Origin: Macrostomum lignano
Lineage: Eukaryota
NCBI GenBank assembly: GCA_002269645.1
Contig: NIVC01000644.1
Location: forward strand, 124,001-188,000
DNA: 64,000 nt
Direction of reading: 5' to 3'
Part shown: positions 10,538-64,000 of the stretch, one piece after another
Layout of the letters: each line of letters opens with the position of its first letter
Numbering within the stretch: position 1 is the first letter of the stretch
The notes under the pieces: generated by a model
Told to the model about the DNA's origin: nothing
Seen by the model: only the letters and a program-made list of their open reading frames with translations
Databases searched by the model: none
Program-made: the position numbers and the translations under genes

Positions 10538-11761
<1,224 letters not shown>

Positions 11762-13162: not shown

Positions 13163-14577
<1,415 letters not shown>

Positions 14578-15117
14578 GCACAGCTGCCTGGGCGTGTAAA
14601 AACCGGTTTAGTTAAAAACTCATTATAAAGTACTTCTTATAGTGTTATTCACCCGAAATTTTAGTTACTATTATTAACCGTAAATGACTGAAGCAATGTT
14701 GGGACTCGTTTGTACTGAGCTCGTGTATTTTGTAAGTCTAATTAATAAATTTCCCTAAATTGCTGCATCTTTAACTTGTGCATTTTCAAGGCGTTATCAA
14801 TAAACAAACAAACAGGCGAAGCTCGCTGTTGCTAATGAACTTTAAATTTAGAAATCTGCCTCTAGAAATTTGAGTTTTTTTGTGTCAAGCTGCAAGATAG
14901 CAAAATATTCGACGGAGGGCTGTGCAGCCAGCGCCAATACTAAGCCTGGGAACAGAATTCAGTGATCACTTACTGTTGCGGGCTCCTCTTCTTTGTCGGG
15001 CAGGTTCTCCGAGCTCGTTTCTTCAAATCTTCTTCCTCTGGAGTAGTCTTCTTGACTTCTAAAATCGGCCGAATGTGAGAGCGTAACAACTCCATTTGTA
15101 GACGTCGAAGTGTTCCT

Positions 15118-18100: not shown

Positions 18101-19322
18101 CGAGTGCAGAAATCAATATATTCCTCGAGTGCAGAAATCAATATATTCCTCGAGTGCAGAAATCAATATATTCCTCGAGTGCAGAAATCAATATATTCCT
18201 CGAGTGCAGAAATCAATATATTCCTCGAGTGCAGAAATCAATATATTCCTCGAGTGCAGAAATCAATATATTCCTCGAGTGCAGAAATCAATATATTCCT
18301 CGAGTGCAGAAATCAATATATTCCTCGAGTGCAGAAATCAATATATTCCTCGAGTGCAGAAATCAATATATTCCTCGAGTGCAGAAATCAATATATTCCT
18401 CGAGTGCAGAAATCAATATATTCCTCGAGTGCAGAAATCAATATATTCCTCGAGTGCAGAAATCAATATATTCCTCGAGTGCAGAAATCAATATATTCCT
18501 CGAGTGCAGAAATCAATATATTCCTCGAGTGCAGAAATCAATATATTCCTCGAGTGCAGAAATCAATATATTCCTCGAGTGCAGAAATCAATATATTCCT
18601 CGAGTGCAGAAATCAATATATTCCTCGAGTGCAGAAATCAATATATTCCTCGAGTGCAGAAATCAATATATTCCTCGAGTGCAGAAATCAATATATTCCT
18701 CGAGTGCAGAAATCAATATATTCCTCGAGTGCAGAAATCAATATATTCCTCGAGTGCAGAAATCAATATATTCCTCGAGTGCAGAAATCAATATATTCCT
18801 CGAGTGCAGAAATCAATATATTCCTCGAGTGCAGAAATCAATATATTCCTCGAGTGCAGAAATCAATATATTCCTCGAGTGCAGAAATCAATATAATTCC
18901 TCGAGTGCAGAAATCAATATATTCCTCGAGTGCAGAAATCAATATATTCCTCGAGTGCAGAAATCAATATAATTCCTCGAGTGCAGAAATCAATATATTC
19001 CTCGAGTGCAGAAATCAATATATTCCTCGAGTGCAGAAATCAATATAATTCCTCGAGTGCAGAAATCAATATATTCCTCGAGTGCAGAAATCAATATATT
19101 CCTCGAGTGCAGAAATCAATATAATTCCTCGAGTGCAGAAATCAATATATTCCTCGAGTGCAGAAATCAATATATTCCTCGAGTGCAGAAATCAATATAA
19201 TTCCTCGAGTGCAGAAATCAATATATTCCTCGAGTGCAGAAATCAATATATTCCTCGAGTGCAGAAATCAATATAATTCCTCGAGTGCAGAAATCAATAT
19301 ATTCCTCGAGTGCAGAAATCAG
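15118..19322. repeat. 4.2-kb array of a 25-bp satellite (TATTCCTCGAGTGCAGAAATCAATA)
   Basis: About 168 near-identical copies with occasional 26-bp variants; no spacers. Confidence 0.97.
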
Positions 19323-20274
19323 TATCAAAGATGCGCCCTAGTCAACTTTCTATAACAATGACGAGGTCCTCCAGAAAGGGCGTCTTCTAGAAATAACGGA
19401 ATCGGAGTAGTGTGCTCCTATCGGTTACTCTAGGATAATCCAAATCAATCAATCGATAATCCTTTAAGGGTATCGGAATCGGTCCGCAGATCCTATCCAA
19501 TCCCTTAGGAAAATGGGAGGCCTCAAATTCAATGAACTCAGTAAAATCAAATGATCAATAACGGCCGGCAATAAAATCGCTCTCAATCAATCAAATAACA
19601 CAGGCTCGAACAAAGGCTTCCCAAACGGTATTTGTCTCCCTCAGACATGTAGCCTCGATTAGCTTCTCCCGCAAGCTTAAGCTCTTCAGAGGCTGCTCCG
19701 AGTCTGAGATTTTTAGCTCGGATTTTGGCTTGTATTTATAGGAAAATCTTGCGAGAATCAGGTTATTTTGGGTAGGTGACAGTTTCGCGTTCTAGAAATT
19801 TGACCCTTTGAAAATTGAATAGGATTCTTGCGAATCGTACAATAGATTTCAAGCATTAATTACCATATTCGGAGTTCTAAATTGAAATGTTGCAAAAATG
19901 ATCATTCGTTCGTTTCGTGGTCTTAAAAATAAAGTGTGACCATTTGGCAGTGAGACATAAATTTAACATAGAATCCTAATTTTATAAAAGAAAAGCTCCA
20001 TGAATATGAATAGAGCTGTAAGAAAGGCATTGACTTGGCGAGCTTCCTATCAGAAGAAATTCCTCCAGAAGCTCTACTTGAGTAGTCCTTGGCGTCAATA
20101 TAATCTGCAACAAGATGCGGACTGGATTGCTGAAGCCTGGCATTGCCACTTGGCATTCTCTTGTGTAGACCTGTTTTGCGGATGCAACAGGTCTATCATT
20201 GATCTTTTTTCATTTTGCGTATGTGAGCTACTGAGGTGGCCATGAGCCATGGGCCATCTGTCTGCCTGCCACTC

Positions 20275-33950: not shown

Positions 33951-35093
33951 TCATATCCGCCTCAACTGCACGGACTCCTCCCGAGACCGCTGCTCTCCAG
34001 CTGAGCAGGGCCTCAGCTTGTTGCGAAACGATGGAATCGAAACCACGTAGACAACAAAGTTGGCGAAGGAGTCCATGCTAGTGAGGGTGTTGGCCACGCC
34101 GCTGAACACGTGCACCTTCATGCAGTGGTCGCCGCACTCGAAGTCCTTGATGATGCCAGCAATTAGCATGGGCAGCTCGCAGAGCACGAAGCTGCCGCAG
34201 AGCACCAGCACTGTGCGGTTGACGGCGTCGCTCTGGCTTCGTCGATGACGCATCGAGGTTGAGTTGGTCGACTCACGGTCGCGAGTGCTGCTCACGCTGT
34301 TGCTGATCGGCACCTGCAGGACGTTGGCGGTATTGGCGGCTGCCCGCAGGCTGCAGGTCATCAGCGTGCTGATCACCAGCAGGCACACGATGGGCATCGG
34401 AGACGTCAGGACGAAGAACAGCTTCGGGTAGGCGCTGTACCTGCGGCTGTGCGCGAACGCGGCCGGCGCCAGGCGCACGATCTGCCGCGACTCGGCGCAC
34501 AGGAAGTAGGCAAGCTCGAAGGCACGCGGAGTCGTCAGCAGCGCCGCCAGCAGGCCGATGAGCAGCAGGCTCAGCCGGAAGGAGCGGCGCGACTGGCTCC
34601 GCTGGCTGCTCAGGCTGGCGCTGATGGCGCGGTAGCGGCGCCAGGCGATGAGCACGATGATCCAGTTGCGCAGGATCAGCGAGGATTTGTAGATGATCCA
34701 GACCACCTGGCACACCAGGTAGATGAGGAACTGGGCTACAGCGAGAGAACTGCCAATGGGCATCAGGTGACTATTGGTGCTCCCAACCAGCAGGTAAAAC
34801 AGCTCGAATGACAGGCCGCAGCTGTTGAAGCAGACCTCGCAGCAGCTCAGGTAGAATATCATCGAGATGAACAGGCTTCGACGCTTGAATGATAGGAACA
34901 CCTTGATGGAGACCAGATTCACCATGAGCCCGATCATGGCCGCGATGCACTTGATGAAGTAGAGGCTGTCCAGCATCACCTGCGTGGGACCATTGTCCGC
35001 GTGGAATAGCGGCGTCTGCGGCTCAGTGCAGTTCCCGTGCACAATGTACACCATGCCGAAGGGCACATCGTCGGTGTGGTTCTCATCGAACAT
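33951..35093 (-). CDS. Intronless class A (rhodopsin-like) GPCR, orphan peptide-receptor-like, 380 aa
   Basis: Seven hydrophobic segments; N-glycosylation sites (NHT, NCT); TM1 GLMVNLVS; TM3 end IAWRRYRAI (DRY position); TM6 F.LCELP; TM7 DSFANFVVY; helix 8 PSFR. The ATG at 35093 follows a TTTTCAG acceptor. The longer ORF start at 35258 lies inside the LTR. Confidence 0.85.
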   Translation of the reverse strand: MFDENHTDDVPFGMVYIVHGNCTEPQTPLFHADNGPTQVMLDSLYFIKCIAAMIGLMVNLVSIKVFLSFKRRSLFISMIFYLSCCEVCFNSCGLSFELFYLLVGSTNSHLMPIGSSLAVAQFLIYLVCQVVWIIYKSSLILRNWIIVLIAWRRYRAISASLSSQRSQSRRSFRLSLLLIGLLAALLTTPRAFELAYFLCAESRQIVRLAPAAFAHSRRYSAYPKLFFVLTSPMPIVCLLVISTLMTCSLRAAANTANVLQVPISNSVSSTRDRESTNSTSMRHRRSQSDAVNRTVLVLCGSFVLCELPMLIAGIIKDFECGDHCMKVHVFSGVANTLTSMDSFANFVVYVVSIPSFRNKLRPCSAGEQRSREESVQLRRI

Positions 35094-35124
35094 GGCTCTG
35101 AAAACGGTGTGATAATGGCGTGTG

Positions 35125-38100
35125 TGTTGAAGTTTGCTTCTTTTAATTAAGTATATTTTATCAGTTTGAACAAAAAGAAATACACAAGATGAAAAATTGA
35201 GCAGTTTGGGGGGGGCACTTAAAGTATTAGCGTATTTGCGATATGAACTAACAACCATAGATATATCGGTACGATACTGTATTGAATATTTATTGAACTT
35301 TCTAGAAAGGGATACGCACAGCTATTTGCATTAACAATATTAATCAATATTATGTATCTGACAATTACTATATAAAGTACTAAAAGTACGAGCTATATAC
35401 TATAAACAACACTCCCACTTAATTGTCAGAAACTTATCATTGGAAGATTTAAGTTAATCGCGGTAGATTACTCAGTAGTCTCTGATATTAAAAATGGATG
35501 ACAATGACATTAGTTACTTCAGTTACTCCAGTTACTTCAATTCATATCCATACACTTAATACCAAGCATTGATCGCAGATTTTCAAACTGATGCCTGGGA
35601 ATTGGCTTTGTTAGAATGTCCGCCAGCATTTCCTTTGTCGGACAGTATTCCAGTTTCACAGTACCAGCTTGAATAGCATCTCGAATAAAATGATAGCGGA
35701 TGTCAATATGCTTTGTCCGCTTGTGTCGAATCGGATTTTTTGACATTGCAATGGCTCCTTGATTGTCTTCCTTAATTACAGTTGACCCAGTGATATTGGC
35801 ACCCAAATCACTTACAAGTCGACGAAGCCATATTGCCTCCTGTGTCGCAGACGCAAGGGCCATGTACTCAGCTTCTGTCGTTGACAACGCCACCGTGGTT
35901 TGCTTTTGACTTAACCATGTTACTGCTCCACCGGCCATAATGAAAACACTTCCAGTGACTGAGCGTCTGCTATCCAAGTCCGACGCCCAATCAGCGTCTG
36001 AGTAGCCAATGATCTCGTTACTTTCAGACTTCTCATATTTCAGAACGACGTCCGATGAGCCTTTCAGGTATCGAAGAATTCTCTTGGCAGCGGTGAGATG
36101 AGCCTCAGTTGGTTTGGAATTGAATTTCGATACTGCTCCCACTGCTTGAGCAATGTCTGGCCGTGTAGCGATCGCTGCGTACAATAGGCTGCCTACAATT
36201 GATTGATAGGCCTTTGGATCCACGAATTTGCTGTAGCCATCGTTTTCAACGAGCTTGACGCTTGAATCCATTGGGGTTGTGGCTGGGTTTGCTTCCAACA
36301 TTTTAAACTTCTTCAGTAGTTGCATAATGTATTGCTTCTGATGAAGTTGAAGAAATCGTCTCTCTGAGTCAATCACTATTGTCACTCCTAAACAGTAATG
36401 AAGCTCTCCCATATCTTTCATCTTGAATCGTCGAGTGAATTCCTCCTTGATACTCTGCATTTCATCCATAGTATCAGTAGCCATCACCAAGTCGTCAACA
36501 TAAACCGCAATGATTGACATGTTTCCAAGTTTGCGAGTGAACACACATGGGTCTGCTCCACTTTCCTTGAATCCAATCGAGATTAGGTAATCACAGAGGG
36601 CCTTGTTCCAACACCGGGGTGATTGCTTTAGACCATATAGCGATCTTTTCAGCTTGCAGACTAAATTCTCTTCGTCGCATTTAACGTATCCGGGTGGTTG
36701 ATCCATGAAGATTTCTTCTGTTAAATGTCCGTTTAGAAATGCAGTGACCACATCCATTTGATGAATGTGCATTTCTCGTTGAGTTGCGAATGCCAGTATA
36801 GTACGGATTGATGAGAATCTTACCACAGGAGAAAACGTCTCGTCATAATCCACTCCAGGTTGTTGAGAATACCCTTTGGCAACCAGGCGTCCTTTGAATC
36901 GTTCAATGTTTCTGCAGCTGTCATGCTTCACTTTGAATACCCACTTGCAGCCAACAGTCTTTCGTCCTTCTGGAAGAGGAACTAATTCCCACGTATCATT
37001 TTCTATCAGAGAGTTGTATTCCGAGTCTGTTGCTTCTTTCCATTCCTTCGCATTGTCACAACTCCAAGCCTCGTCAATCGATCTGGGTTCCAAAATCTCC
37101 ATGGCTCGAAAAGCACGATGTTGTGGCTCTGTTGTACTTAGGCTAGCTACTTCGAAGTTCTCATTGTATTGAAAACGCTCTGGGGTTTTCCTTTGTCGCG
37201 TGGTCGTTGGCAGAATTTGTTGGATTTCAGTTTCAATTTCTTCATTCGGAGTTGTTCGGCTGTTGTGCTCGTCGAGGTTGACTTCCATATGTGAATTTAT
37301 CTTTTCATTGTTCTGCTGGAAATCATTCAACTTTCCGAAGTCTCCCTCATTGAAGATGACATCGTAACGAACAACTGTTTTCCTAGTTCTTTCGTCAAAC
37401 AATCTGTAGCCCTTTTGATTGTCACTGTAGCCAACGAACCTTAGCTTGGTAGTCTTCTTATCAAGTTTTTGTCTCTCTACTGTAGGAATGTGAGCATAAG
37501 CTACACAGCCAAACGTTCGAAGATGTGAGATGTTTGGCTTTCGTCCACACCATCTTTCGTAGGGTGTCATCATTGGCGCTACCGAGTTCGTCGGGACTCT
37601 GTTGCGGATATACGCGGCTGTGTTGATGGCTTCTGCCCAATAAGCATTGCTAAGACCAGCATGAGTTATCATTGTTCTAGCAGATTCGATGAGAGTACGG
37701 TTCATTCTTTCAGCAACACCGTTCTGTTCTGGTGTATGGGCTACCGAAATTTCGTGTCGAATTCCTTTTGCAAGTAAAAACGCAGAAAATTCCTTGGACA
37801 TGTACTCTCCTCCACCATCAGTTCGGAGAACTTTTATTGTTTTTTCAGTCTCATTTGTCACCTGCGCTTCGAATTCCTTAAACTTCTGGAAGACTTCAGA
37901 CTTAGTCTTCAGAAAATAGACCTTCACAATGCGAGAGAAATCATCGATGAAAGTCGCAAAAAATCGATTCCCGCCAAACGACTGCGTCTGCATTGGTCCA
38001 CAAATGTCACTGTGCACAAGTTGCAGTACTTCTGATGAGCGAATTTCTCCGACTGATTTGTGATTCTTTCGATGCGCCTTTCCTTCAACGCACGCTTCAC

Positions 38101-39902
38101 AGAAATTCATATCACTCACAATGGAAGTGTCAGTACCCTCGACGTACCTTTTCTTGAATAGTTGTTCGAGTTGATTTCTGTGGAGATGTCCTAGACGATG
38201 ATGCCACAAATTGGCAGTTTCGAGCTCTGACTTTGTAGTCGTTACTGCAGCTGTAGCTAAGTTGTAATCTACATCACACTCAAGTTGATACAATCGATCA
38301 ACTAGTGTTCCAAAGCCTACTAGCTTCCCTGTTTGGTTTCGAATCCAGCACCTAGTGTGACCAAACTGAATGACATTGTTCTTAAGTGTAGCCGCACGTA
38401 CACTGAACAGATTGCAGGCTAGTCTAGGTACGAAAAGTACAGATCCAAGAACTGCGTTAGAACGCTCACCACCAGGGAGTCTCGTGACGATGTTCACTCG
38501 TCCAGTTCCGTAAGCTTGAACTGTTCGCCCGTCTCCGAGCCCTACATTTTCCGGTTCATCGAATTCAGTGTAGTCTTTTAGAGCATTCCTTTGACAGGTC
38601 ATATGTCTTGTCGCACCAGAGTCAATTATCCACCGTGCGGTTGTGTCCTGAGGACCAGTTTCTTCAGAGGTAAGAAATGTAGCGGCACTATCGGCTATCT
38701 CGTTGTCCAGGTTCGGATTCGAATGACTCGTACTTTCTGCAGCTTTAGCTTTATGCAGAGTCGATTTTGAGTTTTGCTGCCTGTTGCTCACGTTGAACCT
38801 GCACTCTCTACTGAAGTGTCCTTCCTTGCCACATGTGTAGCACTTAATTGGTCTGCGTCCCTTAAATTTGTCAACACGAAGAGCAGATTCCGAATCACGG
38901 GATTCGTATTTCATAGTTTCACTTCGTTTCATTTCTTCATTAAGCAGTGCTTGTTGAACCGTCAGCAAAGTCAGCTCCTCTTCCTTTCGGGTCTCCAGAG
39001 CCGTAACCAGATGACTGTAGCTGTCAGGTAGACTGCTAAGAAGAATCACAACCTGGTCTTCGTCAGACACAGCAGCATTAATGGACGCCAGCTTGTCAGT
39101 TAACTCCTTCAGACAGCGAATGTGCTCCTGAACTGGAGTCCCATCAGTCATCTGCAGTCTAAATAGTTTTTTCTTCAAAAACAACTTGTTGGCAGTCGAG
39201 TCACGTTCGAAATGACCACATAAAATTTGCCACATCTGCCTCGGATCATCATCGCATGTAGTCACAAGGTAGATGTACTCACTGCTGAGAGACAGAACTA
39301 TCATTGCTGCTGCTCGCTGTTGCTGTTCCTTGAATTCATTGCGTCGTGCTTCATTTGCGTCTTGCTGAAGAACATCTTCTCCGGTAGCTATGCCCCAGAG
39401 TCTTCTTGCGATTAAGCAATGTTTCATTTGGATTTTCCACGTCATCCAATTGTCCTTCGTGAGCTTCTCTATGTGCCATTTTTCTTCGCTTGCAGCCATA
39501 GCAACGTAACTGATCGACCGAGCGATCAAGTTTCCAGATGGCACGAACAACCAGATTACCAGAATGATCTAGTACATCGAAGTACTCGCAGTGGAAGCGT
39601 GCTGGGCCCATAACCTGTTGAAGTTTGCTTCTTTTAATTAAGTATATTTTATCAGTTTGAACAAAAAGAAATACACAAGATGAAAAATTGAGCAGTTTGG
39701 GGGGGGCACTTAAAGTATTAGCGTATTTGCGATATGAACTAACAACCATAGATATATCGGTACGATACTGTATTGAATATTTATTGAACTTTCTAGAAAG
39801 GGATACGCACAGCTATTTGCATTAACAATATTAATCAATATTATGTATCTGACAATTACTATATAAAGTACTAAAAGTACGAGCTATATACTATAAACAA
39901 CA
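35125..39902 (-). mobile_element. Full-length intact Ty1/Copia LTR retrotransposon
   Basis: 287-bp LTRs at 35125-35411 and 39616-39902 (TGTTG...CAACA), identical by eye; 5-bp TSD GTGTG; PBS GGTTATGGGCCCAG (Copia-type internal tRNAiMet priming) next to the 5' LTR; PPT TTAAGTGGGAG next to the 3' LTR. Confidence 0.97.
35537..39499 (-). CDS. Copia Gag-Pol polyprotein (Gag, zinc knuckle, protease, integrase, RT, RNase H), 1320 aa
   Basis: Uninterrupted ORF with CYTCGKEGHFSREC, WIIDSGAT, LWHHRLGH, VHSDICG/RTDGGGEY, YVDDL, DADWA/EAEY/EDNQG and KHIDIRYHF in Copia order (IN before RT). Confidence 0.97.
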   Translation of the reverse strand: MAASEEKWHIEKLTKDNWMTWKIQMKHCLIARRLWGIATGEDVLQQDANEARRNEFKEQQQRAAAMIVLSLSSEYIYLVTTCDDDPRQMWQILCGHFERDSTANKLFLKKKLFRLQMTDGTPVQEHIRCLKELTDKLASINAAVSDEDQVVILLSSLPDSYSHLVTALETRKEEELTLLTVQQALLNEEMKRSETMKYESRDSESALRVDKFKGRRPIKCYTCGKEGHFSRECRFNVSNRQQNSKSTLHKAKAAESTSHSNPNLDNEIADSAATFLTSEETGPQDTTARWIIDSGATRHMTCQRNALKDYTEFDEPENVGLGDGRTVQAYGTGRVNIVTRLPGGERSNAVLGSVLFVPRLACNLFSVRAATLKNNVIQFGHTRCWIRNQTGKLVGFGTLVDRLYQLECDVDYNLATAAVTTTKSELETANLWHHRLGHLHRNQLEQLFKKRYVEGTDTSIVSDMNFCEACVEGKAHRKNHKSVGEIRSSEVLQLVHSDICGPMQTQSFGGNRFFATFIDDFSRIVKVYFLKTKSEVFQKFKEFEAQVTNETEKTIKVLRTDGGGEYMSKEFSAFLLAKGIRHEISVAHTPEQNGVAERMNRTLIESARTMITHAGLSNAYWAEAINTAAYIRNRVPTNSVAPMMTPYERWCGRKPNISHLRTFGCVAYAHIPTVERQKLDKKTTKLRFVGYSDNQKGYRLFDERTRKTVVRYDVIFNEGDFGKLNDFQQNNEKINSHMEVNLDEHNSRTTPNEEIETEIQQILPTTTRQRKTPERFQYNENFEVASLSTTEPQHRAFRAMEILEPRSIDEAWSCDNAKEWKEATDSEYNSLIENDTWELVPLPEGRKTVGCKWVFKVKHDSCRNIERFKGRLVAKGYSQQPGVDYDETFSPVVRFSSIRTILAFATQREMHIHQMDVVTAFLNGHLTEEIFMDQPPGYVKCDEENLVCKLKRSLYGLKQSPRCWNKALCDYLISIGFKESGADPCVFTRKLGNMSIIAVYVDDLVMATDTMDEMQSIKEEFTRRFKMKDMGELHYCLGVTIVIDSERRFLQLHQKQYIMQLLKKFKMLEANPATTPMDSSVKLVENDGYSKFVDPKAYQSIVGSLLYAAIATRPDIAQAVGAVSKFNSKPTEAHLTAAKRILRYLKGSSDVVLKYEKSESNEIIGYSDADWASDLDSRRSVTGSVFIMAGGAVTWLSQKQTTVALSTTEAEYMALASATQEAIWLRRLVSDLGANITGSTVIKEDNQGAIAMSKNPIRHKRTKHIDIRYHFIRDAIQAGTVKLEYCPTKEMLADILTKPIPRHQFENLRSMLGIKCMDMN

Positions 39903-42164: not shown

Positions 42165-42675
42165 GAACCTAACCTAACCCTCACCTAAACCCTGACACCC
42201 TTAACCTAAATTCTACAACCCTAACCTAACACCCTAACACCCTACCTTAAACCCAAACACCCTAACCTAAATCCAAACACCCTAACCTAAACCCAAACAC
42301 TCTAACCTAAACCCAAACACCCTAACCTAAACCCAAACACTCTAACCTAAACCCAAACACCCTAACTTAAACCCAAACACCCTAGCCTAAATCCAAACAC
42401 CCTAACCTAAACCCAAACACTCTAACCTAAACCCAAACACCCTAACCTAAATCCAAACACCCTAACCTAAACCCAAACACTCTAACCTAAACCCAAACAC
42501 CCTAACCTAAATCCAAACACCCTAACCTAAACCCAAACGCCCTAAACTAAACCTAAACACCCTAACCTAGATCTAACACCCTCAACTTAAACCTAAGCAC
42601 CCCAAGCTAAACTTTGACATCCTAACCTAAACCCAAACACCCTAACCTAAACCCTAACACCCTAACCTAAACCTC
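42165..42675. repeat. Telomere-like 20-bp repeat (CCCTAACCTAAACCCAAACA)
   Basis: About 25 copies built from CCCTAA/CCTAAA/CCCAAA hexamer variants. Confidence 0.88.
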
Positions 42676-54720: not shown

Positions 54721-57700
54721 ATGTTAAAATTAGGGCGAATTTCAAGACTGAGAAATATCGTTGGTTTTAACCAGCGCTTGCATCGCAATGCAACTACCAG
54801 TTCAATAACATCGCAATATCCTGTCATTGACCATGTCTATGATGCTGTAGTCGTTGGAGCTGGTGGCGCTGGTTTGCGTGCTGCTTTCGGACTCGCTAAT
54901 GAAGGATTCAAGACAGCATGCGTAACAAAGCTGTTTCCTACTCGATCCCATACTGTTGCAGCGCAGGGTGGAATCAATGCCGCACTGGGAAACATGGAGG
55001 CTGATGACTGGCGATTCCACATGTATGATACGGTGAAGGGTTCTGACTGGCTAGGTGACCAAGATGCTATTCACTACATGTGCGAGCAGGCGCCCAAGGC
55101 TGTGATCGAGCTGGAAAACTATGGTATGCCATTTAGTCGTTTAGAAAATGGCCGGATTTACCAGCGTGCTTTTGGTGGTCAGAGCATCAACTATGGCCAA
55201 GGAGGCCAGGCCCATCGTTGCTGTGCAGTGGCAGATCGAACTGGACATTCAATGCTGCATACCTTGTATGGCAGGTCATTGAAGTATGGCTGCGACTATT
55301 TTGTTGAGTATTTTGCTCTGGACATTATCTATGAAGATGGAATCTGCAAAGGTGTCATTGCCTTGAATTTGGAAGATGGCACAATTCATAGGTTTCAATC
55401 AAAGAATACTGTTTTGGCTACTGGGTGAGTATTGATACTAGTCATTATTGTTTATTACGTTTGACTTGACTTTGGAATTTGACCTTTGGCTTATACACAG
55501 TAAAAGTTTCGAATTTTTTGGCCTTCTCTTAGCTTTGAAACCAAATTAGGCCTATATAAAGTTATTAAGTATTTAAAAAGTTTAATTAATAGATATTTAC
55601 AATAATTTATAAAAATATTAAAATATCATATATGTAACATTGAATAATAAATATTTTATTTTTCTTATAATTAGCAAATCTAGACTAACTAAAACTAGAA
55701 ATATATGGTCTAGATTCTTTATAATTAAGTATATAATTAATAGTTATATAAGCAAATGATTTTAATCAATTTTAATTTATAATAAAGATAATGTAATAGC
55801 TTCTTACTTATAAACTATGAACTTGTGAACTTTATTGCTTGCATATATAAACATTGTTTTGATTGAATTCTTTCCCAATCTTTCATAACTTACAATCATA
55901 AAAATCCTAAAAATCAATAAAATTTTTTAGACAATAATATTAATACATAGTTCTGTGTTCAAATAAAATGTATAAAATTCATAGTCACACATGGTTTCAC
56001 ACATGGTCTAGTTCCAATCACTCATGAAAAAAATCATAGTTGGTCAATCCTTAGTTTATTTTCTATTTGATCTATTGTAACTCTGATAGCTTATGCTTTT
56101 TATAGCAATATATACTTTTTACTATAGACTCATTAAAACTAGGTTTGCTACTAATTGTTAGATTTTGATTATTTGATTATTTAGTTTATTGCCAAGGGGT
56201 ATTTTTATAGATGGCAATCTTATCTAATAAAAAATTGAATTGATTGGTTCACTAAGGCTCATCAATCTAGTGCACTAAGTGCCTGTAGCAAAGAATTAGC
56301 TAGCTATAGGTTGCTTTTAAAACTTAATTTCATGCTTTTTTCTTCTTAACAATGGAGGGTGAAGCTGCTAAATTTAACTGACTTAATACTCACTTCAGAC
56401 TACTATCAGATATATAAGTAGGAAATTGTTAAATATAAGGTTCAGTTGGAATAACTTGTACTCATAAGACAAAGCAGTCATTCACTTTCCACCTGAACCG
56501 CAGAGGCTATGGTCGGTGCTACTTCTCGTGCACCTCAGCGCACACCTGCACTGGCGATGGCACTGCCATGGTCAGCCGCGCTGGCCTGCCCAACCAGGAC
56601 ATGGAATTTGTCCAGTTCCATCCTACTGGCATCTATGGAGCGGGCTGCCTCATCACCGAGGGCTGCCGTGGCGAAGGCGGCTACTTGGTTAATAGCGAGG
56701 GCGAAAGGTTCATGGAGCGCTACGCTCCTGTTGCCAAGGACTTGGCCAGCCGCGACGTGGTGTCTCGTGCCATGACCATCGAGATTCGCGAGGGCCGCGG
56801 AGTTGGCAAGGACAAGGACCACATCTTCCTGCAGCTGCACCACCTGCCGCCTGAACAGCTGCGCAGCCGCCTGCCGGGCATCTCCGAGACCGCCCACATC
56901 TTTGCCGGGGTGGACGTGACCCGGGAGCCGATCCCTGTGCTGCCCACTGTGCACTACAACATGGGCGGCGTGCCCACCAACTGGCAGGGCCAGGCGAGTT
57001 GCGCCCCATGATTATTCGAATAGCCAGTCTCATTAGATTGATAGCCAGTCTCATTAGATTGATAGCCAGTCTCATTAGATTCATAGCCAGTCTCATTAGA
57101 TTGATAGCCAGTCTCATTAGATTGATAGCCAGTCTCATTAGATTGATAGCCAGTCTCATTAGATTGATAGCCAGTCTCATTAGATTGATAGCCAGTCTCA
57201 TTAGATTGATAGCCAGTCTCATTAGATTGATAGCCAGTCTCATTAGATTGATAGCCAGTCTCATTAGATTGATAGCCAGTCTCATTAGATTCATAGCCAG
57301 TCTCATTAGATTCATAGCTAGTCTCATTAGATTCATAGCCAGTCTCATTAGATTGATAACTAGTCTCATTAGATTGATAGCCAGTCTCATTAGATTGATA
57401 GCCAGTCTCATTAGATTGATAACTAGTCTCATTAGATTGATAGCCAGTCTCATTAGATTGATAGCCAGTCTCATTAGATTGATAGCCAGTCTCATTAGAT
57501 TCATAGCCAGTCTCATTAGATTCATAGCCAGTCTCATTAGATTCATAGCCAGTCTCCTGTCCCCCTCCCGCAGGCCATCACCTACGATGCCCAGAAAGGC
57601 TCCGACGTGGTGATCCCCGGCCTGTACGCCGCTGGCGAGGCCGCCTGCGTGTCGGTGCACGGCGCCAACCGCCTCGGCGCCAACTCTCTGCTGGATCTGG

Positions 57701-58996
57701 TCGTGTTCGGCCGCGCCTGCGCGCACACCATCGCCAAGGAGAACCGGCCTGGGGAGAAGCAGGCGCCTCTCCGCTCCGACTCCGGTGAGGCCTCCGTAGC
57801 CAACATCGACCGGCTGCGCAACGCCAAAGGCGACACCCCAACGGCGCAGCTGCGGCTGGACCTGCAGAAGGCCATGCAGAGCAACGCCGCCGTGTTCCGC
57901 GACGGCCCCACCCTGAAGCGCGGCTGCCAGGAGTTCGACGCGATCTACAAACGGATGGCCGATCTGAAGGTCACCGACCGCAGCCTGATTTGGAACTCCG
58001 ATCTGGTTGAGACGCTGGAGCTGCAGAATCTGATGCTCAATGCTGGACAGGTGAGCCCTTCTCCTTCCCTTAGAATCTCTTCTCAGACTTCGCATCCAGG
58101 TTTCATCTTTCGACTCTTATGTCACCCCTAGCCCTAAATATCATCGCACCTTTTATCTCTAATCTAAAATCATTTATATCATTAACTCTCCCCTTTCCCT
58201 CATTCAAATGACATCCCAACCTCTTTGTTAATCTAATCTTGCCTCTGAAAGCCAAGCTCATCCTCGCTTTTTTTATCCAATTCAATCTAATCTCATTCAT
58301 TCTTCTCAAAGTTTCTCCTTTCTCAATAAAATCTCATCTCATCCTTCTATTCTATTCTCACCTTGTATTACACCTGCCTGTTAAAAACGTTACCATGACA
58401 ATAATCACTAATGAGTCATTGCCAACAGCTGTCTTGTGCCTGTTTAGCGATTCCAACGCGTCTAAGAGGCGACTGCTGCGTCACAAGTGCGTCACGTCCG
58501 TTGTAGAATTGTAATGGGGTCGCGAAAGAGTTGTCTAAGAATCGTTGTGTTGGCGCTTAACTTTCGCTTGAGAGTCGCTTTAGCAGGCCTCACATACGAC
58601 TTTACAGCCCCAGAGTCACTTGCGTCGCCTCAGAGAGTCCGTTTCAGAGTCGCAGGCAATAAACGCTTCAAGGTGATCAATCAAATCTAATCTCAACCGT
58701 GAAACCCAGCCGCTCCCGCCCTCTCAACGCAGACTGTGTACGCTGCCGAGGCCCGCAATGAGTCGCGCGGCGCCCACGCCCGCGAAGACTTCAAAGATCG
58801 AATCGACGAGTTCGACTACACCAAGCCGACCGATGGCCAGACCAAGCGGCCGTTCGAGCAGCACTGGCGCAAGCACACGCTGTGCTTCATGGACGAGGCC
58901 ACCGGCAAGGTGACGCTCAAGTACCGGCCGGTCATTGACAAGACCCTCGACCAGAAGGACTGCCCGACAGTGCCGCCGAAGATTCGGGCTTATTGA
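54721..58996 (+). CDS. SDHA: Succinate dehydrogenase flavoprotein subunit, mitochondrial; exons 54721-55424, 56504-56993, 57574-58050, 58733-58996 (644 aa)
   Basis: Transit peptide, [78 protein letters not shown] and PPKIRAY are all present. Exon lengths sum to 1935 nt (in frame). Intron 2 is GC-AG. Confidence 0.97.
57020..57555. repeat. 21-bp minisatellite (GATAGCCAGTCTCATTAGATT) in SDHA intron 2
   Basis: About 25 copies filling the GC-AG intron. Confidence 0.96.
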
Positions 58997-60899: not shown

Positions 60900-62214
60900 A
60901 AGAATGCGCCGCTTCAAAATGACACCAAAGCCCCCTTTTTGCTCTGGGTTTAAGTGTCAGAACTCCAGACACCCCGTGTACTTTTGCGAGATGAGTGCGG
61001 CAATTCAGGCTGCAGTCTGTGGGTTAACTATATCCTCATAGTTGCCCTTGCATGTAATAATATACATGCAAATACATGTGATATATTGCCGTAAAGCATA
61101 TGTGTAGACTAGGCTCTCAGGCACCTGTTTGCGGGAGCTGGACCAAGTGCCCGCGGATGGCGCCATTGATCTCGCTCTTTGTGTCGTCCGCTCACGTTCG
61201 ACCCTGCCTGATGGATAGTTAAATTTCACTTGTGTCTGGCCGAGATTGCGGGTCCACTGCAGAGCTTGGATTAGCAGAGCCAAGCCGTGAAAATATTCGT
61301 AATTATGAGCCTTTGCAGTGAGGACAACAAATCCTGCAGGAGTTTCCAAATCTTTCAACGGCTCCGATCCCCACTGAAGGGATTCAATCTTGAGGTTGTC
61401 TGTTCAAGCGGTGGAGCCAACGTCACTTGGGCTGATCCCCGCTAGCACCCCGTTTAACAACAACAAACAGCACACGCATAGCCTCGATCGGTACGCTTGT
61501 GACAGGTTCCTCAGACAGCTAGGCAGGTTAAAGGCTAGCCAAACTAACAACAATTCATTAAAATCCTTCATCTCATTAATGCAGAAATCGCTAAATCTGA
61601 AACAGAACATACACAGAGTACTGATATACATGAAAAGCCCTTCAGAAATACATGTACTCTTGGCGTAAAGCTTTGTCAAGAGTTGGAAATTGTAAATTAA
61701 GAAATCCGATTAGTTTCGTTTCCTGAAATAAAATAGCACAAACAATTAATAATTTCTTGGAAATTTGCTTGAATAACCACTGCCACACTTTAGGAATCGA
61801 AAGGGTTCGTTATTGAGTTCTGGCTTAATTTATTTCCTTCCTCCATCGCATAATAGTTACGTTGAAGGCTGCGCGCTTCCAAAAAGCGACTGGATGCGAA
61901 TTATCGGGGAGAAAAAAGAAACGTTTGTTCACTTTTACCGAATCAAGGAAAATAATTGTCATAGTTTGTCTGGTCATGTTTCGTATCATCAGCCTCGCAG
62001 AATTAAATTCTGACTTTAACCGTCGGCACCTGAAAGAAAAGAGTAGAAAGGGTCAGCATGCACGAAGTATTTCTAAAATGCTAATAAATAAACTAGTCAC
62101 TTGTTGTGACCTGTCTCTCCGGGCACTTCATCAGTTAGTAGTTTCGCTTTGCAATCAGATTCAAAATATTTTCAACACTCACCCATAAATGTAATTCCAT
62201 AGGGCCTACCTACC

Positions 62215-63999
62215 TTAAGGCTGATGCTTGCCCTGCGGCTTTCCTTTGCTGGGTCCCTTCAGATGCTGCTTTTTGGCAGCTCTCCCGCCGGACTTTTTCT
62301 CGCCATTTCCGCCGGCCTTGTGTACTTGAACTTTTTTCTTCTTATTAGATTCGTTTCTCTCGGAGCCGCCTACAATCATCCTCTTCTTGTTCTTCTCTGA
62401 AACAGTCAAACTTGTTGATGAATTGCATGCTAGTGTGTCAGAAATGTCGCCATTGTGAGTCATGGCGCTGATACTCACTTCTAAACTGAGGCGGCAGGGA
62501 GCTCTCGGAGCCGCCTACAATCATCCTCTTCTTGTTCTTCTCTGAAACAGTCAAACTTGTTGATGAATTGCATGCTAAAGTGTGTCAGAAATGTCGCCAT
62601 TGTGAGTCATGGCGCTGATACTCACTTCTAAACTGAGGCGGTAGGGAGCTCTCGGAGCCGCCTACAATCATCCTCTTCTTGTTCTTCTCTGAAACAGTCA
62701 AACTTGTTGATGAATTGCATGCTAAAGTGTGTCAGAAATGTCGCCATTGTGAGTCATGGCGCTGATACTCACTTCTGAACTGAGGCGGTAGGGAGCTCTC
62801 GGAGCCGCCTACAATCATCCTCTTCTTGTTCTTCTCTGAAACAGTCAAACTTGTTGATGAATTGCATGCTAGTGTGTCAGAAATGTCGCCATTGTGAGTC
62901 ATGGCGCTGATACTCACTTCTAAACTGAGGCGGCAGGGAGCTCTCGGAGCCGCCTACAATCATCCTCTTCTTGTTCTTCTCTGAAACAGTCAAACTTGTT
63001 GATGAATTGCATGCTAGTGTGTCAGAAATGTCGCCATTGTGAGTCATGGCGCTGATACTCACTTCTAAACTGAGGCGGCAGGGAGCTCTCGGAGCCGCCT
63101 ACAATCATCCTCTTCTTGTTCTTCTCTGAAACAGTCAAACTTGTTGATGAATTGCATGCTATTGTGTCAGAAATGTCGCCATTGTGAGTCATGGCGCTGA
63201 TACTCACTTCTAAACTGAGGCGGCAGGGAGCTCTCGGAGCCGCCTACAATCATCCTCTTCTTGTTCTTCTCTGAAACAGTCAAACTTGTTGATGAATTGC
63301 ATGCTAAAGTGTGTCAGAAATGTCGCCATTGTGAGTCATGGCGCTGATACTCACTTCTAAACTGAGGCGGCAGGGAGCTCTCGGAGCCGCCTACAATCAT
63401 CCTCTTCTTGTTCTTCTCTGAAACAGTCAAACTTGTTGATGAATTGCATGCTAGTGTGTCAGAAATGTCGCCATTGTGAGTCATGGCGCTGATACTCACT
63501 TCTAAACTGAGGCGGCAGGGAGCTCTCGGAGCCGCCTACAATCATCCTCTTCTTGTTCTTCTCTGAAACAGTCAAACTTGTTGATGAATTGCATGCTATT
63601 GTGTCAGAAATGTCGCCATTGTGAGTCATGGCGCTGATACTCACTTCTAAACTGAGGCGGCAGGGAGCTCTCGGAGCCGCCTACAATCATCCTCTTCTTG
63701 TTCTTCTCTGAAACAGTCAAACTTGTTGATGAATTGCATGCTAAAGTGTGTCAGAAATGTCGCCATTGTGAGTCATGGCGCTGATACTCACTTCTAAACT
63801 GAGGCGGTAGGGAGCTCTCGGAGCCGCCTACAATCATCCTCTTCTTGTTCTTCTCTGAAACAGTCAAACTTGTTGATGAATTGCATGCTAGTGTGTCAGA
63901 AATGTCGCCATTGTGAGTCATGGCGCTGATACTCACTTCTAAACTGAGGCGGCAGGGAGCTCTCGGAGCCGCCTACAATCATCCTCTTCTTGTTCTTCT
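62215..63999 (-). CDS. Putative tandem-exon gene (3' part): 11 x 63-nt exons (62479-62541, 62626-62688, 62773-62835, 62918-62980, 63063-63125, 63208-63270, 63355-63417, 63500-63562, 63645-63707, 63792-63854, 63937-63999) plus Lys-rich exon 62215-62396
   Basis: Each unit reads TTTGACTGTTTCAG | 63-nt phase-1 exon | GTGAGT; spliced peptide (KKNKKRMIVGGSESSLPPQFR)n continues in frame into unique KKKKVQVHKAGG...GKHQP*. The two exon variants are synonymous and the indels are intronic. No homolog recognised; continues beyond the window. Confidence 0.6.
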
Positions 64000-64000
64000 C
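62357..64000. repeat. 145/147-bp tandem array (>=11 copies, runs off window end)
   Basis: Near-identical units; ORF-track offsets of 145 and 292 confirm the periodicity. Confidence 0.97.

What the first reader, a model, noticed from the sequence alone, without database searches (positions are those of the whole stretch)
62215..64000. A '145-bp satellite' that is an exon+intron cassette: tandem exon amplification disguised as satellite DNA
Seen in sequence: on the minus strand every unit reads acceptor TTTGACTGTTTCAG, then a 63-nt exon, then donor GTGAGT and an 82- or 84-nt intron. The exon length is divisible by 3 (phase 1-1) and only one of its three frames is open, encoding KKNKKRMIVGGSESSLPPQFR. 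The two exonic variants I can see (CTG/CTA Leu in copies 62626, 62773, 63792; TTT/TTC Phe in copy 62773) are both synonymous in that frame. The 2-nt indel and the G/T variant fall in the intron. The array ends mid-exon at about 62357, and the same frame runs on through unique Lys/Gly-rich sequence to TAA at 62215. Inference: a protein with at least 11 basic NLS-like/Ser-Pro repeats, each encoded by its own exon. Copy number could vary by unequal crossover, and isoform length by frame-preserving exon skipping. If general, some nucleosome-sized tandem repeats in such genomes may be coding cassettes. Caveat: two synonymous sites alone are weak statistics.
Basis: partly seen in the sequence, partly recalled or inferred. 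Interest (0 to 1): 0.85.

Follow-up and report, generated by a model that had tools for sequence, protein, structure and literature searches.

The report
Tandem exon-intron cassettes, flatworm secreted-protein gene
The 145-bp "satellite" is the repeated 3' part of a Macrostomum lignano (flatworm) gene for a secreted, lysine-rich repeat protein, each unit holding one 63-nt exon and its own short intron; this is a real and tidy example of a gene architecture that is already known.

Summary
Window 62357-64000 holds 11.3 copies of a 145/147-bp unit. On the minus strand every unit reads acceptor (TTTGACTGTTTCAG), a 63-nt exon in phase 1-1, donor (GTGAGT) and an 82- or 84-nt intron. Only one frame is open. 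It runs through a hybrid last exon to TAA at 62217-62215.

The window is Macrostomum lignano contig NIVC01000644.1. Independent UniProt models from this species contain exactly the predicted spliced peptide, ...SSLPPQFR|KKNKKRMIVGGSESSLPPQF. They also supply the missing 5' part: a signal peptide, an acidic patch and a basic region. Two diverged paralogues keep the core VIVGGSESSL(A/P)PQFRKKN and a similar Lys/Gly tail.

So the array is coding, not a satellite. The "NLS-like" reading is not supported, because the protein has a secretory leader. The within-array synonymous-site argument is too weak to count (P about 0.04-0.11). The generalisation to other arrays fails in this window: none of 12 other long-period unit periods tested is exon-like.

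The architecture has precedents, namely schistosome MEG-4.1/10.3 tandem 81-nt exons and spider silk genes with homogenised introns. I rate it a new member of a known kind, of moderate interest. Protein function is inferred only. No RNA data were available.

The parts
62357..64000 (-). Tandem array of 145/147-bp exon+intron cassettes, 11.3 copies. It runs off the window end. The contig continues about 12 kb further.
   Evidence: TRF; unit parsing; contig mapping
63937..63999 (-). Repeat exon 1 in the window (63 nt, phase 1-1). It encodes (K)KNKKRMIVGGSESSLPPQFR(K). An 82-nt intron follows at 63936-63855.
63792..63854 (-). Repeat exon 2 (CTA Leu variant). An 84-nt intron follows at 63791-63708.
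63645..63707 (-). Repeat exon 3. An 82-nt intron follows at 63644-63563 (A variant).
63500..63562 (-). Repeat exon 4. An 82-nt intron follows at 63499-63418.
63355..63417 (-). Repeat exon 5. An 84-nt intron follows at 63354-63271.
63208..63270 (-). Repeat exon 6. An 82-nt intron follows at 63207-63126 (A variant).
63063..63125 (-). Repeat exon 7. An 82-nt intron follows at 63062-62981.
62918..62980 (-). Repeat exon 8. An 82-nt intron follows at 62917-62836.
62773..62835 (-). Repeat exon 9 (CTA Leu and TTC Phe variants). An 84-nt intron follows at 62772-62689.
62626..62688 (-). Repeat exon 10 (CTA Leu variant). An 84-nt intron follows at 62625-62542.
62479..62541 (-). Repeat exon 11. An 82-nt intron follows at 62478-62397.
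62215..62396 (-). Terminal coding exon. Its first 41 nt are identical to the repeat exon. The rest is unique and encodes ...RNESNKKKKVQVHKAGGNGEKKSGGRAAKKQHLKGPSKGKPQGKHQP, ending at stop TAA 62217-62215.
   Evidence: the tail is homologous to the C-terminal part of paralogue P0002 (E 9e-12)
62030..62213 (-). Candidate 3'-UTR intron (inference only). A consensus donor AAG|GTAGGT lies one base after the stop, and a strong acceptor TTTCTACTCTTTTCTTTCAG| lies 184 nt downstream. AATAAA follows at 61834-61829.
   Evidence: sequence reading; no transcript evidence

Best explanation
The array is the 3' coding part of a lineage-restricted Macrostomum lignano gene on the minus strand, convergent with SDHA.

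Shown: each 145/147-bp unit is a self-contained splicing cassette. It holds a symmetric (phase 1-1) 63-nt exon, a GTGAGT donor, an 82-84-nt intron with branch-point-like CTGAC 41 nt from the 3' splice site, and a pyrimidine-rich acceptor. Because the exon length is a multiple of 3 and both flanking introns are in the same phase, any gain or loss of whole units keeps the reading frame. So does any donor-to-acceptor pairing between units.

Inferred: the array grew, and is kept 98-100% uniform in exon and intron alike, by unequal recombination or slippage between units. Two features support this. A 3-unit (437-bp) higher-order period is visible. The exonic CTA variant travels with the 84-nt intron in 3 of the 4 units that have that intron.

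Product (5' part from UniProt models, shown only for family members): signal peptide, acidic patch (EEHEEFYPEEEEEEFF), basic region, then at least 12 copies of a 21-residue unit (KKNKKR-MIVGGSESSLPPQFR), then a Lys/Gly tail.

Inferred function: a secreted, intrinsically disordered polycation made by a gland cell, with length and charge set by repeat number. The multibasic KKNKKR linkers are also plausible proprotein-convertase sites, so processing into many copies of a peptide of about 14 residues is a live alternative.
For: - Anatomy and frame.
- Better than chance: 25 of 2000 shuffles; codon log-odds +15.3 bits against negative values in the other five frames.
- Organism and contig.
- Independent protein models carry the exact spliced junction plus the 5' part with a signal peptide.
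- Paralogues conserve the repeat core and the tail.
- Unspliced reading is closed by an in-frame stop in every intron.
- The intron has no Rfam match and no unusual fold.
- No Pfam domain other than one repeat-inflated motif hit.
- AlphaFold2 gives no fold in the repeat region (pLDDT about 44-51).
- Composition of the window-encoded part: pI 11.9, K 20.7%, S 12.8%, G 11.0%.
- Variant linkage and 437-bp higher-order period.
- Homogenised repetitive introns that delineate repeat-coding exons are a described phenomenon: PMC9779670.
Against: - No RNA-seq or cDNA could be examined.
- I could not check how the UniProt models were built, because Wasik et al. 2015 is not held. That they come from transcripts is my inference. 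It rests on their stop-free 5' leaders upstream of the Met and their open ends inside the repeat.
- All of those models stop after 1-2 repeats, so no model shows 12 repeats in one mRNA.
- The gene's own 5' exons lie outside the window and could not be fetched. The link between this array and those N-termini therefore rests on identity of the repeat peptide. The genome also holds about three homeologous copies.
- Within-array variation is too sparse to show purifying selection.
- No homologue was found in the searched libraries outside M. lignano, apart from one motif-level hit.
- Function is entirely inferred.
Confidence: 0.8

Rival explanations
1. Ordinary non-coding minisatellite or satellite. 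In a genome where tandem repeats are very abundant, one 145-bp unit happens to contain an AG...GT pair with an open frame.
For: 43% of this window is tandem arrays. Simple and tandem repeats make up 15% of the genome (PMC5730564). Exon and intron parts are equally conserved. A splice-like parse this good arises in 1.25% of shuffles, which is not vanishingly rare.
Against: The exact spliced peptide is present in independent protein models with a proper 5' coding region. The repeat core and tail are conserved in diverged paralogues. The frame continues for 46 unique codons to a stop. Codon usage favours only this frame. None of 12 other long-period unit periods in the window gives such a parse.
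Confidence: 0.04
2. Same gene architecture, but the product is a polyprotein precursor. Proprotein convertases cut at the multibasic KKNKKR linkers, basic residues are trimmed, and at least 12 copies of a peptide of about 14 residues (MIVGGSESSLPPQF) are released. Repeat number then sets the dose of a signalling or defence peptide.
For: Signal peptide, followed by an acidic pro-region, followed by repeated units bounded by KR/KK sites. In the paralogues the core peptide is conserved while the flanking linker sequence varies. Multi-copy peptide precursors are a standard design (own knowledge, for example the apidaecin and FMRFamide-type precursors).
Against: There is no C-terminal Gly for amidation. 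The peptide matches no known flatworm neuropeptide family in the searches run. Linkers in known precursors are usually acidic spacers with short dibasic sites, not six-residue basic blocks. The long basic N-terminal region and the Lys/Gly tail look structural. No processing data exist.
Confidence: 0.2
3. The array in this particular homeologue is a recent runaway expansion that is not used in full. Mature mRNAs contain only one or a few repeats, through heavy exon skipping or an upstream polyadenylation site, or this copy is a decaying duplicate.
For: All available models hold only 1-2 repeats. The genome carries about three homeologous copies, so relaxed constraint on one is plausible (PMC5730564). 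Identical splice sites allow any donor to pair with any acceptor.
Against: Truncation after 1-2 repeats is what short-read assembly of identical repeats produces (noted for Macrostomum repeat proteins in PMC8621496). All 11 exons, all 11 donors and the 11 acceptors inside the window are intact, and the terminal exon is open. Introns of 82-84 nt favour pairing of adjacent sites (own knowledge of intron definition).
Confidence: 0.12
4. Each repeat is a calpastatin subdomain-B-like inhibitory motif, [LIV]-G-x4-[ST]-[IL]-P-P-x-[YF]-R. The protein would then be a multi-headed inhibitor of calpain-type cysteine proteases.
For: The 290-aa conceptual product scores 59.7 bits on Pfam PF00748 (cut-off 22), with 10 stretches all on profile positions 96-121. 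Genuine subdomain-B peptides from PDB 3DF0 and 3BOW map to the same positions, 98-117. The spacing of the conserved residues is identical.
Against: The score is the sum of about 6 bits per identical unit. A single unit gives no hit, so the apparent significance comes from repetition. Subdomains A and C are absent. The protein has a signal peptide, whereas calpains are cytosolic. Tyr is replaced by Phe.
Confidence: 0.04

Closest known systems
Schistosoma mansoni MEG-4.1 (10.3 antigen) and micro-exon genes in general
   Same: Both are flatworm genes for secreted proteins with an N-terminal signal peptide. A central repeat region is encoded by tandemly repeated short symmetric exons (81 nt, 27 aa in MEG-4.1). 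Exon lengths are multiples of 3, so exon skipping keeps the frame. The proteins are hydrophilic and disordered, with no homologues outside a narrow lineage. Sources: Davis et al. 1988 MCB 8:4745 (title only, cited in PMC10526429, PMC3723592 and PMC4015677).
   Different: No sequence similarity was found. MEG exons are separated by long introns (up to 5 kb), whereas here they are 82-84 nt. The cassettes here are 98-100% identical including the introns, and at least 12 in number. The species is free-living. The repeats are Lys-rich, not Thr/Pro-rich O-glycosylation repeats. Alternative splicing is not demonstrated here.
Spider flagelliform and Argiope MaSp2 spidroin genes with repetitive homogenised introns
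   Same: Introns regularly delimit repeat-coding exons. Exon+intron units are duplicated and homogenised together by unequal crossing-over. The products are secreted structural proteins (PMC9779670).
   Different: The silk units are much larger, with large iterated exons and long introns. The protein chemistry differs (Gly/Ala/Pro). There is no homology.
Macrostomum lignano adhesion protein Mlig-ap1 (Gly/Arg/Lys-rich repeat regions)
   Same: Same species. It is a secreted gland protein whose bulk is highly positively charged Lys/Arg/Gly-rich low-complexity repeat. Short-read transcriptomes fail to assemble such repeats (PMC8621496).
   Different: Mlig-ap1 is 5,407 aa with vWD, TIL, C8, lectin and EGF domains. 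The present protein has none of these and is much smaller. No sequence relationship was detected. Where the present gene is expressed is unknown.
Calpastatin inhibitory subdomain B (Pfam PF00748)
   Same: Shared short pattern with identical spacing: [LIV]-G-x4-[ST]-[IL]-P-P-x-[YF]-R. The repeats align to the same profile positions as genuine B peptides. Calpastatin is also disordered and repetitive.
   Different: Only about 6 bits per unit. Subdomains A and C are absent. The flatworm protein has a secretory leader, while calpastatin is cytosolic. This is most likely a chance or convergent short motif.
Classical non-coding satellite DNA of about 145-170 bp
   Same: Head-to-tail array of near-identical units of nucleosome-like length, with a higher-order period.
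   Different: The array is small (at least 11.3 copies in the window). It lies in a gene-dense stretch 3.2 kb from SDHA. It has intact splice signals and one open frame in every unit, and it matches annotated proteins.

Membership tests
Tandem exon-intron cassette array (tandem exon duplication within a gene) | Every repeat unit contains a complete exon with acceptor and donor, plus a complete intron | tested here: met
   Eleven of 11 complete units have GTGAGT after a 63-nt exon. TTTGACTGTTTCAG precedes ten of them and the terminal exon. The acceptor of the first exon lies outside the window.
Tandem exon-intron cassette array (tandem exon duplication within a gene) | The exon is symmetric (length a multiple of 3, same intron phase on both sides), and one frame is open across all spliced copies into unique sequence | tested here: met
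   63 nt, phase 1-1, one open frame, 290 codons to TAA
Tandem exon-intron cassette array (tandem exon duplication within a gene) | Mature transcripts or proteins contain the exon-exon junction | tested here: inconclusive
   The junction peptide QFR|KKNKKRMIVGG is present in UniProt models A0A1I8IUW5, A0A1I8JLP8 and A0A1I8JIW0. How those models were built could not be verified, and no RNA reads were available.
Tandem exon-intron cassette array (tandem exon duplication within a gene) | Coding sequence under constraint relative to the intron | tested here: inconclusive
   Within the array there are 2 variable sites in the exon (both synonymous, P 0.045-0.11) and 2 in the intron. Across paralogues the core peptide is conserved, but no paralogue DNA was available.
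Schistosome-type micro-exon gene (MEG) | Signal peptide and a small secreted product | tested here: met
   The leader MLLKGRAAAVSSLLLLVLLLVGTRCQA is present in P0001 and P0004-P0007. P0007 is named "Secreted protein" by UniProt. It was judged by eye, because no signal-peptide predictor was available.
Schistosome-type micro-exon gene (MEG) | Most of the coding sequence lies in short (3-81 bp) symmetric exons | tested here: met
   Eleven 63-nt symmetric exons account for 693 of the 873 coding nt (stop included) visible in the window. The upstream exons were not seen.
Schistosome-type micro-exon gene (MEG) | [quoted passage not shown] | tested here: not met
   Introns are 82-84 nt.
Schistosome-type micro-exon gene (MEG) | Sequence homology to a named MEG family | tested here: not met
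   The only hits at E <= 0.001 among 1.84 billion representatives are M. lignano proteins and one Symbiodinium motif match. Two word-indexed searches returned only M. lignano proteins.
Schistosome-type micro-exon gene (MEG) | Isoform variation by exon skipping | tested here: inconclusive
   P0004 lacks exactly one 23-codon repeat relative to P0005. This could be exon skipping, an allele or an assembly collapse.
Non-coding satellite DNA | No protein-coding capacity and no match to expressed proteins | tested here: not met
Calpastatin (Pfam PF00748 Calpain_inhib) | Inhibitory domain with subdomains A, B and C; significant match of a single domain | tested here: not met
   Only profile positions 96-121 (subdomain B) are matched. 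A single unit gives no hit. The 59.7 bits is summed over 10 identical units.
Multi-copy peptide (prohormone-type) precursor | Signal peptide, with repeated peptide copies flanked by dibasic cleavage sites | tested here: met
   Each unit is bounded by ...FRKKNKKR|M....
Multi-copy peptide (prohormone-type) precursor | Evidence of processing, an amidation Gly, or similarity to a known peptide family | tested here: not met
   No Gly precedes the basic site. There is no family match in Pfam. Processing itself cannot be tested with these tools.

The most novel reading that the evidence does not exclude
The cassette array is a free-living-flatworm counterpart of the schistosome micro-exon system. Identical, individually spliceable symmetric exons would let both germline copy number and per-transcript exon choice tune a secreted protein. 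In addition, each 21-residue exon product would be a functional calpastatin-subdomain-B-like module, [LIV]-G-x4-[ST]-[IL]-P-P-x-[YF]-R, making the protein a secreted multi-headed cysteine-protease inhibitor built one inhibitory motif per exon.
Probability: 0.05. Interest if true: 0.7.

Novelty: new member of a known kind. Interest (0 to 1): 0.35.

Why it matters
This is a clean, compact example of how a repeat protein can grow: a 145-bp unit that carries its own exon, donor, branch point and acceptor can be copied or lost without ever breaking the frame.

It has a practical consequence. Pipelines that mask tandem repeats before gene calling would hide such a gene, and TRF masking was part of the M. 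lignano repeat annotation (PMC5730564). No product of this gene from the GenBank annotation of the assembly turned up in the protein collection searched. Short-read transcriptomes truncate it after one or two repeats.

It also shows that symmetric-exon, secreted, orphan repeat genes are not confined to parasitic flatworms, which bears on where the schistosome micro-exon architecture came from.

It does not change any general view of satellite DNA. In this window it is the only one of 37 arrays with this property.

Tried and rejected
Extending beyond the window end to reach the upstream exons and the homeologous arrays (all failed):
- Exact look-ups of P0001 and P0002.
- The terminal-exon ORF.
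- Two SDHA exon ORFs.
- The 61-aa unspliced ORF.
- A homology search seeded with SDHA exon 1, which did not return the M. lignano protein. That search was wasted.

Searches that found nothing:
- Rfam on 61000-64000: no match.
- Intron folding: z = -0.04, so no structured RNA or mirtron-like hairpin.
- PDB sequence search with the repeat: nothing meaningful.
- Pfam: no domain apart from the repeat-inflated Calpain_inhib hit.
- AlphaFold2 on P0001: no fold beyond the signal helix.

Considered and set aside:
- Homology with Symbiodinium natans CAE7229251.1. It has three 21-aa repeats, M[VS]IGGD[ED]SSLPPEYRHG.MSD, and was found at E 4.4e-6. The score is inflated because repeats align to repeats. 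The motif there contains a PPxY element in a transmembrane protein. The ORF there is uninterrupted.

Papers not held: Wasik et al. 2015 and Davis et al. 1988.
Full report
**1. What is in the sequence**

Tandem Repeats Finder reports one array at 62357-64000. It has period 145, 11.3 copies and 98% matches, and is also scored at periods 292 and 437.

Read on the minus strand and cut at the acceptor motif, the window holds 11 complete 63-nt exons. Ten are preceded by TTTGACTGTTTCAG; for the first only the last G of the acceptor is inside the window. All eleven are followed by GTGAGT. The intron is 82 nt in seven units and 84 nt in four. A twelfth, terminal exon follows at 62396-62215.

Only one exon frame is open. 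Splicing puts one base of a Lys codon at the end of each exon and two at the start of the next, which is phase 1-1.

The first 41 nt of the terminal exon are identical to the repeat exon. The sequence then becomes unique, and the same frame runs 46 more codons to TAA at 62217-62215.

Without splicing the frame closes 14 codons into every intron (the 61-aa ORFs).

The window-encoded product is 290 residues, with pI 11.9, 20.7% Lys, 12.8% Ser and 11.0% Gly.

**2. Is it more than chance?**

A simple splice-site PWM plus open-frame parse of the circular unit scores 7.9 bits. This is reached by 25 of 2000 dinucleotide-preserving shuffles.

Codon-usage log-odds were trained on SDHA, Mago nashi, the ricin-B-like ORF and the GPCR ORF of the same window. 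The result is +15.3 bits in the proposed frame and -6 to -52 in the other five.

The array has only four variable sites. Two are exonic and both are synonymous. Two are intronic: one substitution and one TT indel. Two random exonic changes would both be synonymous with P = 0.045, or 0.11 for transitions. Exon and intron are equally homogenised, and the array itself says nothing about selection.

The sequence-internal evidence is suggestive, not decisive.

**3. Source and context**

The intronless Mago nashi ORF at 14119-14577 is found exactly on three contigs of GCA_002269645.1, the Macrostomum lignano Mlig_3_7 assembly.

One of them, NIVC01000644.1, is 100% identical to the window over 4.4 kb. 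This places window position 1 at contig position 124,001. The contig is 199,995 bp, so about 12 kb lie beyond the window end. The other two contigs are about 95% identical homeologues. That fits the partly duplicated karyotype described for the sequenced line (PMC5730564).

Tandem arrays cover 43% of the window (37 merged intervals).

SDHA lies on the plus strand. I reconstructed four exons: 54721-55424, 56504-56993, 57574-58050 and 58733-58996. It is convergent with the repeat gene and ends 3.2 kb from the repeat gene's stop codon.

**4. Independent evidence that the cassettes are coding**

A search with the conceptual spliced peptide returned three M. lignano UniProt proteins.

P0001 (A0A1I8IUW5) and its cluster mates P0004-P0006 read as follows:
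- a stop-free leader;
- M-LLKGRAAAVSSLLLLVLLLVGTRCQA|RP, a classical signal peptide (n-, h- and c-regions, with small residues at -3 and -1);
- an acidic patch, EEHEEFYPEEEEEEFF;
- a basic region;
- ...KEKNQKNRRIVLGGSESSLPPQFRKKNKKRMIVGGSESSLPPQF(R).

The last 22-23 residues are identical to the window's repeat. They span exactly the junction that requires removal of the 82/84-nt intron.

The models stop inside the repeat. This is expected if identical repeats collapse in short-read assemblies, a problem noted for Macrostomum repeat proteins (PMC8621496).

P0004 lacks one 23-codon repeat that P0005 has, on an otherwise identical sequence. That fits frame-preserving exon skipping but does not prove it.

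P0007, named "Secreted protein" by UniProt, is an isoform that shifts frame after ...DIQK.

Two diverged paralogues (P0002, P0003) keep the core VIVGGSESSLAPQFRKKN. They alternate it with a second unit type, SVPKPGSS(K/N)ASLPP(K/R)KP. P0002 ends in ...KKRIQKHKAGGSGVKKTGG..., which is homologous to the window's ...KKKKVQVHKAGGNGEKKSGG... (E 9e-12). So the peptide is conserved where the DNA has clearly diverged.

Caveat. I could not read how these models were produced. That they come from transcripts is an inference from their shape.

**5. What the protein is**

- No Pfam domain apart from one special case, discussed in section 8.
- No PDB relative.
- No confident fold outside the signal helix; pLDDT is about 44-51 over the repeats.
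- A full HMMER scan of 1.84 billion representatives finds only M. lignano proteins plus one motif-level hit.

It is therefore a lineage-restricted, secreted, disordered polycation. The "NLS-like" reading is not supported. The UniProt names (KI67, H15 domain, SET-binding protein, BLVR domain) look like composition artefacts, given that no Pfam domain is found.

Two functional readings remain:
- An intact polycationic gland product, comparable in chemistry to the Gly/Arg/Lys-rich regions of the adhesive Mlig-ap1 (PMC8621496).
- A polyprotein cut at the KKNKKR linkers.

I favour the first by about 2:1, but neither was tested.

**6. Mechanism**

Shown. Each unit carries every signal needed for its own splicing: donor GAA|GTGAGT, branch-like CTGAC 41 nt and TTCAT 22 nt from the 3' splice site, and acceptor TTTGACTGTTTCAG. 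The exon is symmetric.

Inferred. Unequal crossing-over or slippage between units changes copy number without breaking the frame, and homogenises exon and intron together. Supporting observations:
- The 437-bp three-unit period.
- The unit-type order plain/TT/A, plain/TT/A, plain, plain, TT, TT, plain.
- Co-occurrence of the exonic CTA variant with the 84-nt intron in three of the four units that have that intron.

The boundary of repeat homology lies inside the terminal exon. The paralogue's terminal region also begins with a repeat-like ...GGDESS.... The array therefore most likely arose by recombination between a repeat exon and the related start of the last exon.

**7. Comparison with what is known**

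The closest precedent is in another flatworm. S. mansoni MEG-4.1 (the 10.3 antigen) has tandemly repeated exons encoding 81-base repeats, in a secreted protein with a signal peptide. Micro-exon genes are built of symmetric 3-81-bp exons whose skipping varies the protein (PMC10526429, PMC3723592, PMC4015677). The present gene works like this. It is not a MEG by homology, and it has short rather than long introns.

Homogenised repetitive introns that delimit repeat-coding exons are described in flagelliform and MaSp spidroins, and are said to facilitate unit duplication (PMC9779670).

The kind is therefore known. This is a new, unusually compact and uniform member in a free-living species.

**8. 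The Calpain_inhib hit**

The 290-aa product scores 59.7 bits on PF00748 (cut-off 22). Ten stretches all fall on profile positions 96-121. Genuine calpastatin subdomain-B peptides from PDB 3DF0 and 3BOW map to positions 98-117. The pattern [LIV]-G-x4-[ST]-[IL]-P-P-x-[YF]-R is shared with identical spacing.

However, one unit alone gives no hit, and the score is about 6 bits multiplied by identical copies. Subdomains A and C are missing, and the protein is secretory.

The single foreign hit is a Symbiodinium natans transmembrane protein with three 21-aa M.IGGD.SSLPPEYRHG repeats. It has the same motif and period, but its E-value is likewise inflated by repeat-on-repeat alignment.

I record both as leads, not findings.

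**9. The generalisation**

I applied the same parse-against-shuffle test to 12 other unit periods of 52-174 bp, drawn from eight other array regions in the window. None exceeds its own shuffles; the fraction of shuffles at or above the real score is 0.16-1.0. In that run the 145-bp array was mis-registered by a 147-bp unit, so one search is the valid test for it.

In this window the cassette array is therefore unique among 37 arrays.

**10. Verdict**

The structural interpretation is supported by independent protein models and by paralogue conservation. The functional label and the generalisation are not supported. It is a new member of a known kind, of moderate interest (0.35).

The decisive missing piece is spliced RNA evidence, together with the remaining ~12 kb of the contig.

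Noticed in passing
window 62479-63999 (each repeat exon); L004 2603-3538: Each 21-aa repeat matches the calpastatin subdomain-B motif [LIV]-G-x4-[ST]-[IL]-P-P-x-[YF]-R (Pfam PF00748 positions 96-121; 59.7 bits summed over 10 units, but no hit for one unit alone). A Symbiodinium natans transmembrane protein (CAE7229251.1) has three 21-aa repeats with the same motif, M.IGGD.SSLPPEYR. This is probably a convergent short motif.
   Followed up: partly
window 62030-62213 and 61829-61834, minus strand: A consensus donor (AAG|GTAGGT) lies one base after the stop codon, and a strong acceptor lies 184 nt downstream, followed by AATAAA. This is a possible 3'-UTR intron and poly(A) signal for the repeat gene. 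There is no transcript evidence.
   Followed up: no
window 56994-57573: Intron 2 of the SDHA gene has a GC donor (CAG|GCGAGT ... CAG). No GT alternative keeps the frame. The intron consists largely of a 21-bp minisatellite (57020-57556, 25.6 copies).
   Followed up: partly
window 35125-39902: A very young Copia-type LTR retrotransposon. It has two 287-bp LTRs that are 100% identical (35125-35411 and 39616-39902), flanking an intact 1337-aa gag-pol ORF (35537-39550, minus strand). The neighbouring 435-aa GPCR-like ORF (33951-35258) takes its apparent N-terminus from the LTR.
   Followed up: partly
window 1-64000: Tandem arrays (37 merged TRF intervals, periods 4-174 bp) cover 43% of the window. 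Many give long spurious ORFs in several frames. The 25-bp array at 15113-19325 (168 copies) is absent from homeologue L001 (NIVC01000800.1), which is otherwise about 95% identical.
   Followed up: partly
window 42168-42673: An interstitial array of degenerate telomere-like units (ACCCTAACCTAAACCCAAAC, about 25 copies).
   Followed up: no
window 14119-14577 and 10538-11761: An intronless Mago nashi gene is present on three contigs of the assembly (homeologues). Next to it lies a ricin-B-lectin/BPSS1860-like single-exon ORF.
   Followed up: partly
P0007 against P0001 (5' exons outside the window): UniProt isoform A0A1I8FPF1 switches after ...SSKDIQK to a different sequence (AYQEFTQAGKW...). By eye this looks like another reading frame of the region that encodes ...SLPRIHPSRKVG... 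in P0001. That would imply skipping of a non-symmetric upstream exon or use of an alternative splice site, so not all exons of the gene would be frame-neutral.
   Followed up: no
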